Made by a program: the position numbers and the translations under genes. From Obrimoposthia wandeli (taxonomy: Eukaryota): a DNA stretch of 64,000 bases. This document shows, one piece after another, positions 5,211 to 50,566 of this stretch (its first letter is position 1; every line of letters begins with the position of its first letter). The notes below the pieces were generated by a model. That model was not told the DNA's origin. It saw nothing but the letters and a program-made list of their open reading frames with translations, and did not search any database. The DNA lies in NCBI GenBank assembly GCA_977020255.1, contig CDROCS010002834.1, positions 62,001-126,000 on the forward strand, written 5' to 3'.

Positions 5211-5267
5211 ACTAATTCTGTTTTACTACAACGACAATCACGAAGCATTGTCACTGCGTTTTAATAA

Positions 5268-5344
5268 TGGTGCACGCGGGAGGATTCGAACCTCCGACCG
5301 CCTGGTTCGTAGCCAAGTACTCTATCCAGCTGAGCTACGCGTGC
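5268..5344 (-). tRNA. tRNA-Arg (ACG), copy 7
   Basis: Identical 77-nt sequence. Confidence 0.97.
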
Positions 5345-5401
5345 ACTAATTCTGTTTTACTACAACGACAATCACGAAACATTATCACTGCGTTTTAATG
5401 A

Positions 5402-5478
5402 TGGTGCACGCGGGAGGATTCGAACCTCCGACCGCCTGGTTCGTAGCCAAGTACTCTATCCAGCTGAGCTACGCGTGC
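5402..5478 (-). tRNA. tRNA-Arg (ACG), copy 6
   Basis: Identical 77-nt sequence. Confidence 0.97.
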
Positions 5479-5535
5479 ACTAATTCTGTTTTACTACAAC
5501 GACAATCACGAAACATTATCACTGCGTTTTAATGA

Positions 5536-5612
5536 TGGTGCACGCGGGAGGATTCGAACCTCCGACCGCCTGGTTCGTAGCCAAGTACTCTATCCAGCTG
5601 AGCTACGCGTGC
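5536..5612 (-). tRNA. tRNA-Arg (ACG), copy 5
   Basis: Identical 77-nt sequence. Confidence 0.97.
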
Positions 5613-5702
5613 ACTGTTATTGCTTTACTTATCTTCATGCTAAGAAAGATACTTATTAAAACGAGTCGACTACTAAGTAGTACACTAACCTTAACGAAAG
5701 AA

Positions 5703-5794
5703 TGGCGGTGAAGGAGGGATTCGAACCCTCGATACGGGATAAACCATATACTCCCTTAGCAGGGGAGCGCCTTCAGCCTCTCGGCCACCTCACC
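5703..5794 (-). tRNA. tRNA-Ser (GCT), copy 3
   Basis: 92 nt GGTGAGGTGGCCGAGAGGCTGAAGGCGCTCCCCTGCTAAGGGAGT...CCTTCACCGCCA, long variable arm, serV-like. Confidence 0.97.
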
Positions 5795-5806
5795 ACACGA
5801 ATTAAA

Positions 5807-5883
5807 TGGTGCACGCGGGAGGATTCGAACCTCCGACCGCCTGGTTCGTAGCCAAGTACTCTATCCAGCTGAGCTACGCGTGC
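5807..5883 (-). tRNA. tRNA-Arg (ACG), copy 4
   Basis: Identical 77-nt sequence. Confidence 0.97.
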
Positions 5884-5940
5884 ACTAATTCTGTTTTACT
5901 ACAACAACAATCATGAAACATTGTCACTGCGTTTAAATGA

Positions 5941-6017
5941 TGGTGCACGCGGGAGGATTCGAACCTCCGACCGCCTGGTTCGTAGCCAAGTACTCTATCC
6001 AGCTGAGCTACGCGTGC
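5941..6017 (-). tRNA. tRNA-Arg (ACG), copy 3
   Basis: Identical 77-nt sequence. Confidence 0.97.
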
Positions 6018-6107
6018 ACTGATCTTGCTTTACTTATCTTCCTGCTAAGAAAGATACTTATTAAAACGAGTCGACTACTAAGTAGTACACTAGCCTTAAC
6101 GAAAGAA

Positions 6108-6199
6108 TGGCGGTGAAGGAGGGATTCGAACCCTCGATACGGGATAAACCATATACTCCCTTAGCAGGGGAGCGCCTTCAGCCTCTCGGCCACCTCACC
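6108..6199 (-). tRNA. tRNA-Ser (GCT), copy 2
   Basis: Identical 92-nt sequence. Confidence 0.97.
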
Positions 6200-6211
6200 A
6201 CACGAATTAAA

Positions 6212-6288
6212 TGGTGCACGCGGGAGGATTCGAACCTCCGACCGCCTGGTTCGTAGCCAAGTACTCTATCCAGCTGAGCTACGCGTGC
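6212..6288 (-). tRNA. tRNA-Arg (ACG), copy 2
   Basis: Identical 77-nt sequence. Confidence 0.97.
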
Positions 6289-6342
6289 ACTAATTCTGTT
6301 TTACTACAACGACAACTGAAGAATGTCATTGCTTATAAATAA

Positions 6343-6419
6343 TGGTGCACGCGGGAGGATTCGAACCTCCGACCGCCTGGTTCGTAGCCAAGTACTCTAT
6401 CCAGCTGAGCTACGCGTGC
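6343..6419 (-). tRNA. tRNA-Arg (ACG), copy 1
   Basis: Identical 77-nt sequence. Confidence 0.97.
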
Positions 6420-6456
6420 ACTGATGTTTCTTTTTCACAATGCCATTAAAAAATAA

Positions 6457-6548
6457 TGGCGGTGAAGGAGGGATTCGAACCCTCGATACGGGATAAACCA
6501 TATACTCCCTTAGCAGGGGAGCGCCTTCAGCCTCTCGGCCACCTCACC
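6457..6548 (-). tRNA. tRNA-Ser (GCT), copy 1 (first gene of the operon)
   Basis: Identical 92-nt sequence. Confidence 0.97.
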
Positions 6549-47004: not shown

Positions 47005-47157
47005 ATCTTATGACCTTTATTAACCGCTACAGCTACACACTGTTACATAAAATATGTGGCGTATTTAATAAATTTTCAGTTAACTGCTTTTGCATATTTT
47101 CTCATCAATGTAGAATAGTTTTTCAATAAGTTTTGTTTATTGAGAGAGAGTTTTACT

Positions 47158-47577
47158 ATGCCACACGCCCAGACAGAGACAACTTCATCACAACCCCACC
47201 ACGCGATCTCATGTAATCACTGTGACTACCATGTCACGAACATACAGCCTCAATTTTATGTTATTGACCCAAATGGTAAGCGAATTAACACAGATTCTAT
47301 TAGCCAAAGCATTACAGCACTATATGGTATTAATTCGTTGGTGGTTGAAGGAGCAATGACGGGAAAAAATGAAGATGATAATGCCAAAGCATTACATCAA
47401 ATAGTGCAAGCTCTCAGTGGAAAACTCTATCGCCATAACTGCCAACAATGTGCGAACCAATTTTCGATCAATCCTCAAAAAGATAAGCATGCTTGTCCAC
47501 ATTGCTGGTCTCAGAGTATTGTGCAAATGAGCGGTGGCGAACAATGCCCTAAGTGCCAACAAGGTAAATTAAATTAG
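47158..47577 (+). CDS. Hypothetical protein with four CxxC motifs (139 aa)
   Basis: CNHC, CQQC, CPHC, CPKC; GAGAG RBS before ATG 47158. Confidence 0.75.
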   Translation: MPHAQTETTSSQPHHAISCNHCDYHVTNIQPQFYVIDPNGKRINTDSISQSITALYGINSLVVEGAMTGKNEDDNAKALHQIVQALSGKLYRHNCQQCANQFSINPQKDKHACPHCWSQSIVQMSGGEQCPKCQQGKLN

Positions 47578-48681: not shown

Positions 48682-48832
48682 CGCGGTGAGGTAAATACAA
48701 TATAGATTGGGCAACTTGGTACAAGCTTAGTATTGAATGAATTTAACAGTCAGAGAGGCGATATCAACAGTGCCTCTCTTCTGCTTGTATGCACTTAAGA
48801 AACAACATGTGCTTAAGCAGGCATACTAATTA

Positions 48833-49027
48833 CTATTTAACACTCGGTTCTTGGATTTGATAAAGCTTATGTGTGTCGCACGGCTCATCACAATCACATT
48901 CTTTATCCACTCCAACGTTTGCTAAACCACCACAGCTTCCACTGATCGTTTTCTTTTTCACAACCCAGCCAATAGCCATCGCAGCAATCACTAACAAGAA
49001 AACAGCCATCGTTAATATAAATGTCAT
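48833..49027 (-). CDS. NqrM (DUF539)-like small membrane protein
   Basis: 64 aa, TM helix, SGSCGGL and KECDCDEPC (C32, C44, C46, C50); AGGAGG RBS; ATGA overlap with the upstream gene. Confidence 0.8.
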   Translation of the reverse strand: MTFILTMAVFLLVIAAMAIGWVVKKKTISGSCGGLANVGVDKECDCDEPCDTHKLYQIQEPSVK

Positions 49028-49500
49028 AACGTAAATCCTCCTATCTTAGTTAGACCTTGGATTGTTGATTTTCTATTCATCGTAGTGCCAATTTTTATCG
49101 GTACGGGTTTCTTCTTGCCAGCACATCCGCAGCCACAATCGCCTTTATCTCGCTTGCATGGGCGACCTTGTTCAGCTGTTGTCAGGGCTTCTTTTTCTAC
49201 TTTCCCCGTCATAACAGCATCAATAGAACTACGCTGAGGCACTTTTGTAACACTGAAGCCCGCATTCAGTAAACGCCCTAAAGAGCGTTGCCCAACATTG
49301 CCTAGCACAATTTCTTTAACGCCTAATTCACTCAGTTGACGTTGAATAACTTTCTTATGCTTACAACCTAACTCTTTACTGCCTGTATTTTCAATGCGCT
49401 CTATGAATTGTCCTTGCGAGTCATAAACCATAAAGGCAGCGGCTTTACCAAAGTGCCCTGCAACTTGAGAGCGAAGAGTGATTGCTATTGCGATACACAT
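49024..49500 (-). CDS. NifB/NifX (dinitrogenase FeMo-cofactor family) domain protein
   Basis: MCIAIA..VAGHFGKAAAFMVYD, VLGNVGQR, Cys-rich tail CKRDKGDCGCGC; start 1 nt after the DUF134 stop. Confidence 0.75.
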   Translation of the reverse strand: MCIAIAITLRSQVAGHFGKAAAFMVYDSQGQFIERIENTGSKELGCKHKKVIQRQLSELGVKEIVLGNVGQRSLGRLLNAGFSVTKVPQRSSIDAVMTGKVEKEALTTAEQGRPCKRDKGDCGCGCAGKKKPVPIKIGTTMNRKSTIQGLTKIGGFTL

Positions 49501-49501
49501 A

Positions 49502-49879
49502 TCAGTGTTCCTCTGTTTCAGTCTCAACGATTGCTACGTTTTTAGGCTGAATAATAGATGATGACAAAACCATTTTTGCCTGACGTTGTGTGTGAGGTAA
49601 ATGCGTACTTTGCAAATCGAGCGCTTGCCCCGTCACTAAAGCTTGCGCCACTTTTTGACGAGCACGAGACACAATACTACCCAACGTCTGACGAGATACG
49701 CCTAACTCGTGAGCTGCCGCCAATTGCTGCATACCATTCATATCAACCAAACGTAGCGCCTCCAATTCATCATCGGCCAGTACGATTGAGGTCAATTCAG
49801 TCATTGGAATGCCATTAGGCTTAAAACATGAATATGCTGGGCGGCAATTAATCTTTCGCTGGATCTTTGGTCTACCCAT
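49502..49879 (-). CDS. DUF134 (UPF0251) HTH protein
   Basis: MGRPKIQRKI..FKPNGIP..DELEALRLVD..Q.AAA.ELGVSRQT..RARQKVAQAL. Confidence 0.85.
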   Translation of the reverse strand: MGRPKIQRKINCRPAYSCFKPNGIPMTELTSIVLADDELEALRLVDMNGMQQLAAAHELGVSRQTLGSIVSRARQKVAQALVTGQALDLQSTHLPHTQRQAKMVLSSSIIQPKNVAIVETETEEH

Positions 49880-50289
49880 AAATCCCTCACTTTGGTTTAT
49901 AAATATATTAACGCACATTATTGGCGTATGCCGAAAACCATGTATTGATCCAACACAGCTAAATACTAAAAATAATCAACGATTATTGAAAAATCGGGTT
50001 TCAGAAGAAAATGCTATTAATCATGGTTTGGGGGCTGTTGAATCGACTAATAAAGAAACATGCAGAAGAAGTAATACGAATTAAGTTAACGTAATAATAT
50101 GCAGTAAAAAACGCATAAAACCATACAATACAACCAGTAAACAGTACTTCAGCACTCGATTACAGAGTATTTAAATTCAATTCAGCCAAGAATATTTAAC
50201 AACAACAAATAGCACATTATGCTGGAAGCAAATATTAGCCACTAAAATTAGACTGTTCAGTTTAATTTAACATTATTATTATGCTGATA

Positions 50290-50324: not shown

Positions 50325-50362
50325 ACGCACCGTTGAAAAACGAATTCAAGGTTGAATTTTAT

Positions 50363-50566
50363 ATGCGCATGTTCAAACGCTACCTGCCTAAGCTTATCGC
50401 TAAGCATGTAAGCCGTTTATTTAGTGGAAGAATATATATTGATGGCCGAGGAGGCTATCAGTTCGACAAAGGAATGTTACTTGTGCCAGTAAAAGCCCAA
50501 GAGCGACATTATAAAACCGTTAACGAGGTTAATTTCGAAATTAAACGCTTAAAAGAAGTCTATTAA
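50363..50566 (+). CDS. ytfK: DUF1107 (YtfK) family protein, 67 aa
   Basis: MRMFKRYLPKLIAKHVSRLFSGRIYIDGRGGYQFDKG. Confidence 0.8.
   Translation: MRMFKRYLPKLIAKHVSRLFSGRIYIDGRGGYQFDKGMLLVPVKAQERHYKTVNEVNFEIKRLKEVY

What the first reader, a model, noticed from the sequence alone, without database searches (positions are those of the whole stretch)
48833..49879. DUF134 - NifB/NifX-like - NqrM-like operon: candidate undescribed metal/Fe-S delivery module
Seen: three minus-strand genes joined by TGA-T-ATG (49504-49498) and ATGA (49027-49024) junctions with an internal AGGAGG. The NifX-like protein has a CKH segment and a CKRDKGDCGCGC tail; the third protein is a membrane anchor with four Cys. No nif, nqr or apbE genes are in the window. 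Known: NifX/NifY/NafY-family domains carry metalloclusters; DUF134 is an uncharacterised HTH often next to such genes; NqrM is required for Na+-NQR maturation and is proposed to deliver iron to the NqrD/NqrE centre. Inference: a self-regulated carrier plus membrane-delivery unit for a Na+-NQR/Rnf-type or other membrane Fe centre, independent of nitrogen fixation. This is my best candidate for a new system here.
Basis: partly seen in the sequence, partly recalled or inferred. Interest (0 to 1): 0.72.

Follow-up and report, generated by a model that had tools for sequence, protein, structure and literature searches.

The report
DUF134-controlled NifX-like / NqrM-paralogue module
A small, strongly conserved three-gene operon in a Photobacterium contig encodes a DNA-binding protein of unknown function, a cluster-carrier-like protein with a cysteine-rich tail and a second copy of the membrane factor that matures the sodium-pumping respiratory enzyme. 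The three genes share a rare DNA operator across many marine bacteria, which marks an undescribed regulon probably concerned with iron or iron-sulfur handling at the membrane.

Summary
Three overlapping minus-strand genes encode DUF134 (PF02001), a NifX-like protein (PF02579) and an NqrM-family protein (PF04400).

The contig is Photobacterium profundum-like, inside a 1.35 Gb mixed assembly. The NqrM gene is a paralogue ("NqrM2"); the canonical apbE-nqrM copy lies elsewhere. NqrM2 forms its own clade (100/99) with a His…LYQIxEP tail.

In 301 Vibrionaceae genomes, all 171 with a second NqrM also carry DUF134. The module also occurs in Aeromonas, Psychromonas, Agarivorans and Salinivibrio, but in only 1 of 400 other sampled Gammaproteobacteria.

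New here: a 22-bp palindrome (ATTATTGGCAT|ATGCCAATAAT) precedes the module genes even where they are scattered. Of 9 genome-wide sites in five such genomes, 8 lie upstream of the NifX-like gene, NqrM2 or an associated thioesterase. I read it as the DUF134 operator, by inference.

The NifX-like protein has the ORP/TM1290/IssA-type fold, one invariant Cys and a disordered cationic Cys-rich tail.

The function is not shown. I infer Fe or Fe-S delivery to a membrane centre such as NqrD/E or RnfA/E. No extra Nqr/Rnf paralogue tracks the module. I found no description in the searchable literature.

The parts
49502..49879 (-). DUF134/UPF0251 gene (125 aa): N-terminal RPK..R..C..P..SCFKPNG arm plus a sigma-70 region-4-like HTH. 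Candidate repressor of the module.
   Evidence: Pfam PF02001 E 2.6e-21. AF2 mean pLDDT 80.5, three-helix HTH at residues 36-83. Foldseek superposes about 49 residues on ECF sigma region 4 at rmsd 0.6-0.9 A, with weak E-values of 0.01-0.1. The M[GAP]RPK start is conserved in 43 Photobacterium loci.
49024..49500 (-). NifX-like (Nitro_FeMo-Co domain) protein, 158 aa. Globular domain 1-~115 with invariant Cys46 (codon 49363-49365). Disordered cationic tail 113-158 with four Cys (C115, C122, C124, C126).
   Evidence: Pfam PF02579 E 2.1e-14. AF2 pLDDT averages 75-95 per 10-residue block over residues 1-110 and is under 50 for 118-158. Foldseek matches 2re2, 2yx6, 1rdu, 2wfb (ORP), 1eo1, NifX and NafY at E 2e-5 to 4e-4. 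Tail pI 10.06, 11 K+R, 4 Cys, 8 Gly. Cys46 is invariant in 31 sequences from several genera.
48833..49027 (-). NqrM-family paralogue ('NqrM2', 64 aa): one TM helix, GSCGG...CDCDEPC four-Cys motif, then His and a LYQIQEP tail. Its start overlaps the NifX-like stop (ATGA).
   Evidence: Pfam PF04400 E 8.4e-21. The canonical apbE-nqrM lies elsewhere in P. profundum. NqrM2 and canonical NqrM split with 100/99 support. Signature read from 78 sequences.
49917..49938 (.). Candidate DUF134 operator: a 22-bp palindrome, consensus ATTATTGGCAT|ATGCCAATAAT. The window's core copy is TCGGCATACGCCAA at 49921-49934 (2 mismatches), 55 nt upstream of the DUF134 ATG. Its 3' AATAAT may double as the -10 element.
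   Evidence: Conserved in 43 Photobacterium upstream regions. Found upstream of module genes in other genera and in front of unlinked NifX-like, NqrM2 and thioesterase genes. It is the only site with up to 1 mismatch in P. profundum beyond one chance-level hit. Binding by DUF134 is inferred.
49945..49950 (-). Invariant GATCAA box, 10 nt upstream of the palindrome. Found in Photobacterium only. Possibly half of an activator site.
   Evidence: Invariant in the alignment of 19 species. The left half is a poor FNR match, 1-4 mismatches. Absent at the equivalent place in Vibrio loci. No sigma-70 consensus promoter was found here.
49037..49042 (-). AGGAGG ribosome-binding site for NqrM2, inside the end of the NifX-like gene.
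   Evidence: Read directly from the sequence.

Best explanation
The locus is one copy of a conserved, dedicated regulon of facultatively anaerobic, Na+-NQR-containing aquatic Gammaproteobacteria. Shown: three genes under purifying selection encode a DUF134 sigma-4-like HTH protein, a NifX/ORP/IssA-fold protein with one invariant Cys and a disordered cationic Cys-rich (in other genera Cys/His-rich) tail, and a distinct paralogue of the membrane-anchored four-Cys Na+-NQR maturation factor NqrM. The three co-occur phyletically, and each is preceded by the same rare 22-bp palindrome, whether linked or dispersed. Inferred: DUF134 binds this palindrome, which overlaps the core promoter, and so autoregulates the module. 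Its signal probably comes from the NifX-like partner, because the two are fused in some bacteria. The NifX-like protein holds iron or an Fe-S species on its domain and tail. It passes this to NqrM2, whose gene is translationally coupled to it. NqrM2 then presents it at the cytoplasmic face of the membrane for insertion into an intramembrane centre. The most likely clients are the [2Fe-2S] of NqrD/E or of its homologue RnfA/E. On this reading the module is a condition-specific second route alongside canonical NqrM.
For: Family calls. The NqrM gene is a paralogue, and canonical apbE-nqrM is present in every genome tested. The NqrM2 clade has 100/99 support. Synteny holds in 42 of 45 Photobacterium species. 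In 301 Vibrionaceae genomes, 171 of 171 with two NqrM genes have DUF134, 16 have DUF134 only and 114 have neither. NifX-like and NqrM2 stay adjacent even when DUF134 is elsewhere. The palindrome sits upstream of module genes in Vibrio, Salinivibrio, Aeromonas, Psychromonas, Agarivorans and others. Genome-wide, 8 of 9 sites in five genomes precede NifX-like, NqrM2 or thioesterase genes. In five DUF134-negative genomes there are 2 sites, neither at a module gene. A DUF134-NifX-like fusion exists. Fold and disordered tail. dN/dS is 0.06-0.14. Literature: NqrM is proposed to deliver Fe to NqrD/E (PMC6209661, PMC12174285). NqrD/E and RnfA/E each hold an intramembrane 2Fe-2S (PMC12901251). PF02579 proteins IssA, ORP and the MrpORP domain bind Fe-S or metal-sulfide species (PMC5524996, PMC6345978).
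Against: NqrD/E- and RnfA/E-family copy number does not track the module: it is 4 in Photobacterium with the module, and 4-6 both with and without it. So no dedicated client is identified. About 40% of Vibrionaceae manage NQR and Rnf without the module. Sixteen genomes, and three Photobacterium species, keep the NifX-like gene without NqrM2, so NqrM2 is accessory. His-rich tails in some genera fit divalent metals as well as they fit Fe-S. The Cys residues of DUF134 are not invariant. Binding of DUF134 to the palindrome rests on co-occurrence only. The phyletic statistic is not corrected for phylogeny.
Confidence: 0.5

Rival explanations
1. Metal or sulfide buffering rather than cofactor insertion. 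The NifX-like protein with its Cys/His/Lys-rich tail stores or detoxifies a metal or metal-sulfide species (Zn, Ni, Cu, thiomolybdate as in ORP, or thioferrate as in IssA). NqrM2 merely tethers or nucleates it at the membrane. DUF134 derepresses the genes when the ligand accumulates.
For: Tails in other genera are strongly His/Cys-rich, which is typical of metal-binding tails. The nearest solved relatives include ORP, which binds a Mo-Cu sulfide cluster (PMC6345978). IssA stores thioferrate with a cationic tail (PMC5524996). A SLAC1/TehA anion-channel gene lies beside a DUF134-NifX fusion. No client complex tracks the module.
Against: NqrM2 keeps the complete four-Cys motif of a factor known for NQR maturation, and it occurs only in genomes that also have NQR. 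The window's tail has no His. The SLAC1 link rests on one locus plus one 1-mismatch site.
Confidence: 0.2
2. A signalling device. NqrM2 is a membrane-anchored Cys/His redox or metal sensor. Through the NifX-like adaptor it sequesters or releases the sigma-4-like DUF134 protein, by analogy with zinc-binding anti-sigma factors. The module would then regulate only itself and a few targets and would deliver nothing.
For: The DUF134 HTH superposes on ECF sigma region 4, the domain bound by anti-sigma factors. NqrM2 gained a conserved His next to its fourth Cys and lost the basic helix of canonical NqrM. The regulon is tiny and largely self-contained.
Against: Many genomes have DUF134 and the NifX-like gene without NqrM2. 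A regulon that controls little beyond itself has no evident output. PF02579 domains are known as cluster binders, not as adaptors.
Confidence: 0.12
3. NqrM2 is a redundant, drifting duplicate of nqrM that happens to sit next to an anaerobe-type DUF134-NifX pair acquired by horizontal transfer. There is no functional coupling.
For: DUF134 is nearly absent from other Gammaproteobacteria, 1 of 400, which suggests transfer. Three Photobacterium species have lost NqrM2.
Against: All 171 two-copy genomes have DUF134. The start and stop codons overlap. The operator is shared even when the genes are unlinked. The subfamily signature is conserved and the split has 100/99 support. dN is low against a saturated dS.
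Confidence: 0.04

Closest known systems
NqrM (DUF539, PF04400), the Na+-NQR maturation factor encoded after nqrF-apbE
   Same: Same family by HMM. Same architecture: one N-terminal TM helix and a cytoplasmic GSCGG...CxCxxxC four-Cys motif. Found only in organisms that have Na+-NQR.
   Different: It is a separate clade (100/99). It is not linked to nqr or apbE but to a NifX-like gene. The C-terminal basic helix ending in RII/RIA is replaced by [DE]xH...LYQIxEP. It carries the DUF134-type operator. Its role in NQR maturation is untested.
ORP (orange protein) system of Desulfovibrio (Orp8/ORP PF02579 protein, MrpORP and others)
   Same: A single-domain PF02579 protein of the ORP/TM1290 type (2wfb is among the best sequence and fold matches). 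It belongs to the anaerobe-type world in which DUF134 genes and PF02579 genes are neighbours.
   Different: There are no Mrp/MinD-type ATPases or ferredoxin-like Orp3/4 genes here, and no sigma-54 regulator. The partner is instead a membrane NqrM paralogue. The window protein has an invariant Cys and a Cys-rich cationic tail, neither of which is described for ORP. From memory, DVU2107 of the orp operon is a COG1342/DUF134 protein. I could not verify this, because the paper is not held.
IssA, the iron-sulfur storage protein of Pyrococcus furiosus
   Same: A PF02579/IPR003731 globular domain followed by a disordered, cationic, Gly-containing C-terminal tail that contains Cys.
   Different: The IssA tail is about 70 residues, rich in Pro, aromatic residues and Gly, with one Cys. 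Here the tail is 46 residues with four Cys and many Lys. No nanoparticle evidence exists here. The host is a mesophilic or psychrophilic facultative anaerobe. The gene is linked to a regulator and a membrane protein.
NifX / NafY / NifB C-terminal domain (FeMo-co and NifB-co carriers)
   Same: Same fold (Foldseek E about 4e-4 to NifX in NifEN-NifX and to the NafY core).
   Different: It fails the NifX equivalog model (28.5 bits against a cut-off of 112). There are no nif genes nearby, and the organisms are not known diazotrophs as a group.

Membership tests
NqrM (PF04400) | Match to the family HMM above the gathering score | tested here: met
   74.0 bits against a cut-off of 22, E 8.4e-21.
NqrM (PF04400) | Single N-terminal TM helix followed by four conserved cytoplasmic Cys | tested here: met
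   Hydrophobic residues about 3-22, then GSCGG..CDCDEPC. The same motif is seen in 78 family members. The TM helix is judged from sequence, not from a predictor.
NqrM (PF04400) | Encoded downstream of nqrABCDEF-apbE and co-transcribed with them | tested here: not met
   There is no apbE or nqr gene in the window. The apbE-linked copy is a different gene (L070, L002).
NqrM (PF04400) | Required for Na+-NQR maturation (Fe or 2Fe-2S in NqrD/E) | not testable with these tools
   This needs genetics or biochemistry.
NifX (TIGR02663 equivalog) | Score above the equivalog cut-off and a nif gene context | tested here: not met
   28.5 bits against a cut-off of 112. The neighbours are gcvH, DUF1107 and LysR genes.
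Nitro_FeMo-Co superfamily (PF02579 / IPR003731) | HMM match and the alpha/beta NifX-like fold | tested here: met
   54 bits against a cut-off of 26.3. AF2 model plus Foldseek hits to 2re2, 2yx6, 1rdu, 2wfb, 1eo1, 1p90 and 9ian.
IssA-like iron-sulfur storage proteins | PF02579 domain plus an unstructured cationic Gly-rich C-terminal tail | tested here: inconclusive
   Tail pLDDT is under 50, pI 10.06, 8 Gly in 46 residues. However, it has only one aromatic residue and four Cys, against one Cys in IssA (PMC5524996). Thioferrate binding is not testable here.
ORP complex (Desulfovibrio) | PF02579 protein encoded with Mrp/MinD-type and ferredoxin-like Orp partners | tested here: not met
   No such ORFs flank the operon in the window or in 45 Photobacterium loci.
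DUF134 / UPF0251 (PF02001) | HMM match; N-terminal RPK..R..FKP arm plus an HTH | tested here: met
   76.4 bits against a cut-off of 27. Invariant R3, K5, R8, F19 and P21, with K20 nearly invariant. Sigma-4-like HTH.
DUF134 / UPF0251 (PF02001) | Sequence-specific DNA binding as a transcription factor | tested here: inconclusive
   A rare 22-bp palindrome co-occurs with DUF134 and precedes the module genes. Binding itself was not tested.

The most novel reading that the evidence does not exclude
DUF134 is a cluster- or metal-responsive repressor that uses the NifX-like protein as its sensor or co-repressor. Together with NqrM2 it forms a previously unrecognised, separately regulated route that loads the buried intramembrane [2Fe-2S] of RnfA/E (or of NqrD/E under anaerobic or iron-limited conditions) from a protein-bound Fe-S store. 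This would give DUF134/UPF0251 its first function and operator. It would also address how Rnf-type complexes obtain their membrane cluster.
Probability: 0.15. Interest if true: 0.8.

Novelty: new variant of a known kind. Interest (0 to 1): 0.62.

Why it matters
DUF134/UPF0251 is a widespread family of bacterial and archaeal HTH proteins with no assigned function, operator or regulon. Whole-word searches of the held literature for DUF134 or UPF0251 found three papers, none of them functional. This locus and its relatives supply a concrete candidate operator and a minimal regulon that can be tested in tractable Vibrio or Photobacterium strains.

The NqrM paralogue matters for respiratory-complex assembly. 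How the intramembrane 2Fe-2S of NqrD/E, and especially of RnfA/E, is inserted is poorly understood, and canonical NqrM is the only known factor. A second NqrM, separately regulated and coupled to a NifX/IssA-like carrier, points to an upstream donor and perhaps a second client.

It also shows that an anaerobe-type DUF134-PF02579 pair was recruited into NQR-bearing facultative anaerobes.

Tried and rejected
1. FNR-activated promoter. The invariant GATCAA box in Photobacterium sits where a class II site would be. However, its left half matches FNR poorly (1-4 mismatches), and the box is absent in Vibrio loci. I kept it only as an unexplained conserved box.

2. A dedicated extra client complex. 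Counts of the Rnf-Nqr D/E family (PF02508) are 4-6 regardless of whether the module is present. Rejected.

3. A larger regulon in P. profundum. A genome-wide palindrome search found only the operon site plus one chance-level hit.

4. The same operator at low-GC DUF134-NifX loci of other bacteria in the same assembly. None was found, so the operator is clade-specific.

5. A thioesterase partner in Photobacterium. Not found with the Vibrio query.

6. Direct Fe-S sensing by the DUF134 Cys pair. The Cys residues are not invariant, so this is weakened.

8. Literature. Kostyrko 2016, Agarwal 2020 and Fievet 2011 are not held. One paper search timed out. Searches for DUF134, UPF0251, NqrM and 'dinitrogenase iron-molybdenum cofactor' with Vibrio gave nothing on this module.

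9. The search for related loci with the wider alignment failed for lack of a conserved stretch. I repeated it with Photobacterium sequences only.

10. Earlier scan notes by words gave nothing.

Full report
**1. What is there.**
On the minus strand of the window lie three tightly packed ORFs:
- 49502-49879, 125 aa
- 49024-49500, 158 aa
- 48833-49027, 64 aa

The first stop is separated from the second start by one base (TGA-T-ATG). The second stop overlaps the third start (ATGA). An AGGAGG sits at 49037-49042.

Pfam assigns them to DUF134 (76.4 bits), Nitro_FeMo-Co (54.0 bits) and NqrM (74.0 bits), all well above the gathering scores. NCBIfam's NifX, NifB and MrpORP equivalog models are all missed by a wide margin. 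The middle protein is therefore a NifX-fold protein but not NifX.

There is no apbE and no second nqrM in the window.

**2. Whose DNA it is.**
The assembly holding the window has 1.35 Gb in 6912 contigs and contains several different bacteria. It holds seven NqrM loci and eleven DUF134 matches, nine of them above the family cut-off, at very different GC contents.

The window's contig is Photobacterium. The NifX-like protein is 99% identical to those of P. profundum and P. indicum. I met nothing human-like and filled in no masked stretches.

**3. The NqrM gene is a paralogue.**
P. profundum, P. damselae, P. phosphoreum and P. angustum each have two NqrM-family genes. One follows apbE directly, as in Vibrio cholerae. 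The other is the gene studied here (PMC12174285 and PMC6209661 for the canonical arrangement).

In a tree of 82 sequences, the copies recognised by the NqrM2 C-terminal signature (described next) separate from the canonical sequences with 100/99 support. The canonical rows include every apbE-linked copy I had.

The paralogue ("NqrM2") keeps the TM helix and the GSCGG...CxCxxxC motif. It differs in three ways:
- It replaces PEP-C-D-[AN]-R-K-K with a [DE]-x-His after the fourth Cys.
- It loses the basic C-terminal helix ending in RII/RIA.
- It ends in LYQIxEP.

Every genome I checked with NqrM2 also has the canonical copy.

**4. Conservation and co-occurrence.**
Forty-five Photobacterium species carry the NifX-like gene in the same place: ubiH-gcvH-DUF1107 | operon | LysR-ybaK. 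Of these, 43 have DUF134 and 42 have NqrM2.

Two species have lost both partners yet keep the NifX-like gene and a decayed operator. One species has lost only NqrM2.

dN is 0.09-0.37 against a saturated dS. Where it can be computed, omega is 0.06-0.14.

In 301 Vibrionaceae genomes every genome has at least one NqrM. Of these, 171 have two, and all 171 also have DUF134. Another 16 have DUF134 with one NqrM, and 114 have neither. Fisher's p is 5e-66, not corrected for shared ancestry.

The gene order varies:
- **(a)** The triple operon.
- **(b)** DUF134, then a NifX-like gene with a His/Cys-rich tail, then a 4HBT thioesterase, with NqrM2 alone elsewhere.
- **(c)** A solitary DUF134, with a NifX-like-NqrM2 pair elsewhere.

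Outside the family, DUF134 was found in 69 of 401 genomes of the same GTDB order. Where names could be recovered, these include Aeromonas, Psychromonas, Agarivorans, Corallincola and Salinivibrio. It was found in only 1 of 400 other genomes sampled across the class.

A second, Psychromonas-like triple operon sits on another contig of the same assembly (L005).

**5. A shared operator (new here).**
I aligned the region upstream of DUF134 in 19 Photobacterium species. It is unalignable except for one block: GATCAA-N8-TT-N3-TTGGCATATGCCAATAAT. In the window the core lies at 49921-49934, 55 nt before the ATG.

Seen across genera, it is a 22-bp perfect palindrome, ATTATTGGCAT|ATGCCAATAAT, sometimes duplicated 34 bp away. 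It occurs with 0-2 mismatches in several settings:
- In front of the triple operons of Vibrio and of other families.
- Between DUF134 and the NifX-like gene in type (b) loci.
- In front of NifX-like-NqrM2 pairs whose DUF134 is encoded elsewhere.
- In relaxed form, in front of solitary NqrM2 genes.

It is absent at canonical nqrM loci and at solitary DUF134 genes.

I then ran a genome-wide scan with WWTDGCATATGCHAWW in five genomes whose module genes are dispersed. It returned nine sites against one for the reversed control pattern:
- Eight lie 30-80 bp upstream of a NifX-like gene, a solitary NqrM2 or a solitary thioesterase.
- The ninth precedes a yfgJ-like zinc-ribbon gene.

Five DUF134-negative genomes gave two sites. 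One is inside a permease gene and one is at a contig end.

In P. profundum the operon site is the only one beyond a chance-level hit.

That DUF134 is the protein binding this palindrome is an inference. It rests on the strict co-occurrence, on DUF134 being the only DNA-binding protein of the module, and on the site's position over the promoter core. No sigma-70 consensus promoter is found there.

**6. The proteins.**
The AF2 model of the NifX-like protein is confident for residues 1-~115 and disordered for 118-158.

Foldseek places the domain with uncharacterised archaeal and thermophile PF02579 proteins (TA1041, PH0822, TM1290, MTH1175). It also matches the Desulfovibrio orange protein, NifX and NafY. 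A sequence-profile search agrees.

Cys46 is invariant in 31 sequences from several genera. All tails carry Cys, with Lys in Photobacterium and His in Vibrio and Salinivibrio. The window's tail has pI 10.06, 11 K+R and 4 Cys.

This recalls IssA, whose PF02579 domain and cationic tail store thioferrate and can rebuild a 4Fe-4S ferredoxin (PMC5524996). It also recalls the PF02579 domain of MrpORP, which binds an Fe-S cluster (PMC6345978).

The DUF134 model shows a conserved extended N-terminal arm and a three-helix HTH. The HTH superposes on ECF sigma region 4 at under 1 A over about 49 residues, with weak E-values.

A DUF134-PF02579 fusion protein exists in a low-GC bacterium of the same assembly. 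This argues that the two proteins act together.

**7. Mechanism.**
*Shown:* a dedicated, purifying-selection-maintained gene set with a shared cis element, and a NifX-fold protein translationally coupled to an NqrM paralogue.

*Inferred:*
- DUF134 represses the set through the palindrome.
- The NifX-like protein carries Fe or Fe-S.
- NqrM2 receives it at the membrane.

*The client is unknown.* NqrD/E and RnfA/E both hold a buried 2Fe-2S (PMC12901251), and NqrM is thought to serve NqrD/E. However, D/E-family gene counts do not track the module. Many relatives also lack the module altogether.

I put the Fe/Fe-S delivery reading at about 0.5. The rivals are:
- Metal or sulfide buffering, about 0.2.
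- An anti-sigma-like signalling device, about 0.12.
- Meaningless adjacency, about 0.04.

**8. Novelty.**
All three families are known and are annotated as such in public records. NqrM2 is simply labelled '(Na+)-NQR maturation NqrM'.

I found no paper in the held library that describes any of the following:
- a second NqrM class
- its linkage to a NifX-like gene
- a DUF134 function
- a DUF134 operator

Key subscription papers could not be read. I therefore rate this a new variant of known kinds, with a testable regulon as the main gain.

Noticed in passing
whole assembly G000 (contigs C506, C122, C253, C5170, C2637, C2866, C666, C5822, C3569 and others): The 1.35 Gb assembly holds several distinct bacterial genomes. 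There are seven NqrM loci and eleven DUF134 matches, nine of them above the family cut-off, at GC contents of 27-43%. Eight DUF134 genes lie next to a PF02579 match (one of these a fusion; one match is below the cut-off), some in low-GC non-gammaproteobacterial contigs. The window is therefore from an associated or contaminating Photobacterium, not from the main organism.
   Followed up: partly
L021 (G000:C5283:12520-15774), ORF 1501-2088 and ORF 414-1454: A 195-aa fusion of DUF134 with a PF02579-like domain (22.3 bits, just under the Pfam cut-off of 26.3) lies divergent from a SLAC1/TehA-family anion-channel gene. In Vibrio genome G225, a 1-mismatch copy of the 14-bp palindrome core also lies upstream of a SLAC1/TehA gene (L125). 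This may hint at an anion (sulfide, selenite or tellurite) link, or it may be chance.
   Followed up: partly
L064 and L065 (Photobacterium makurazakiensis, P. minamisatsumaniensis), positions about 5260-6540: These species have lost the DUF134 coding sequence and NqrM2. They keep an intact NifX-like gene, the GATCAA box and a decayed operator (CTGGTTTATGCCAATAAT). L068 (P. sagamiensis) has lost only NqrM2. These are natural partial-loss variants, useful for comparison.
   Followed up: partly
L169 (G225:C1:514248-517263), site about 1501-1516, ORF 1555-1779: An operator-like site (ATTTGCATATGCAATA) lies about 40 nt upstream of a 74-aa yfgJ-like double zinc-ribbon gene, between der and xseA. It is the only genome-wide hit not at a module gene. 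It may be an extra regulon member or a chance hit.
   Followed up: no
window 47140-47577 (+): A 145-aa ORF with four CxxC pairs and no Pfam match lies between ybaK and the LysR gene. tblastn matches it in only eight of the 45 loci: 83-86% identity in the three closest species, and 43-49% in P. lipolyticum, P. sagamiensis, P. damselae and one MAG.
   Followed up: no
window 50333-50566 (+): The divergent neighbour of the operon is a DUF1107 protein (E 3.6e-27). It is syntenic in almost all Photobacterium loci, and the 450-bp intergenic region is shared with the DUF134 promoter.
   Followed up: no
window 48752-48779 (-): An AGAGAGGC / GCCTCTCT hairpin with a 12-nt loop lies about 55 nt after the NqrM2 stop. 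It has no T-run. The terminator scan did not call it, and I did not fold it.
   Followed up: no
L092, L094-L103, L022, L005, L167: A 4HBT/PaaI-type thioesterase with an N-terminal H..C..C motif is a frequent fourth member of the module in Vibrio, Salinivibrio and a Psychromonas-like contig. Where solitary, it carries the operator. Its role next to a cluster carrier is unexplained.
   Followed up: partly
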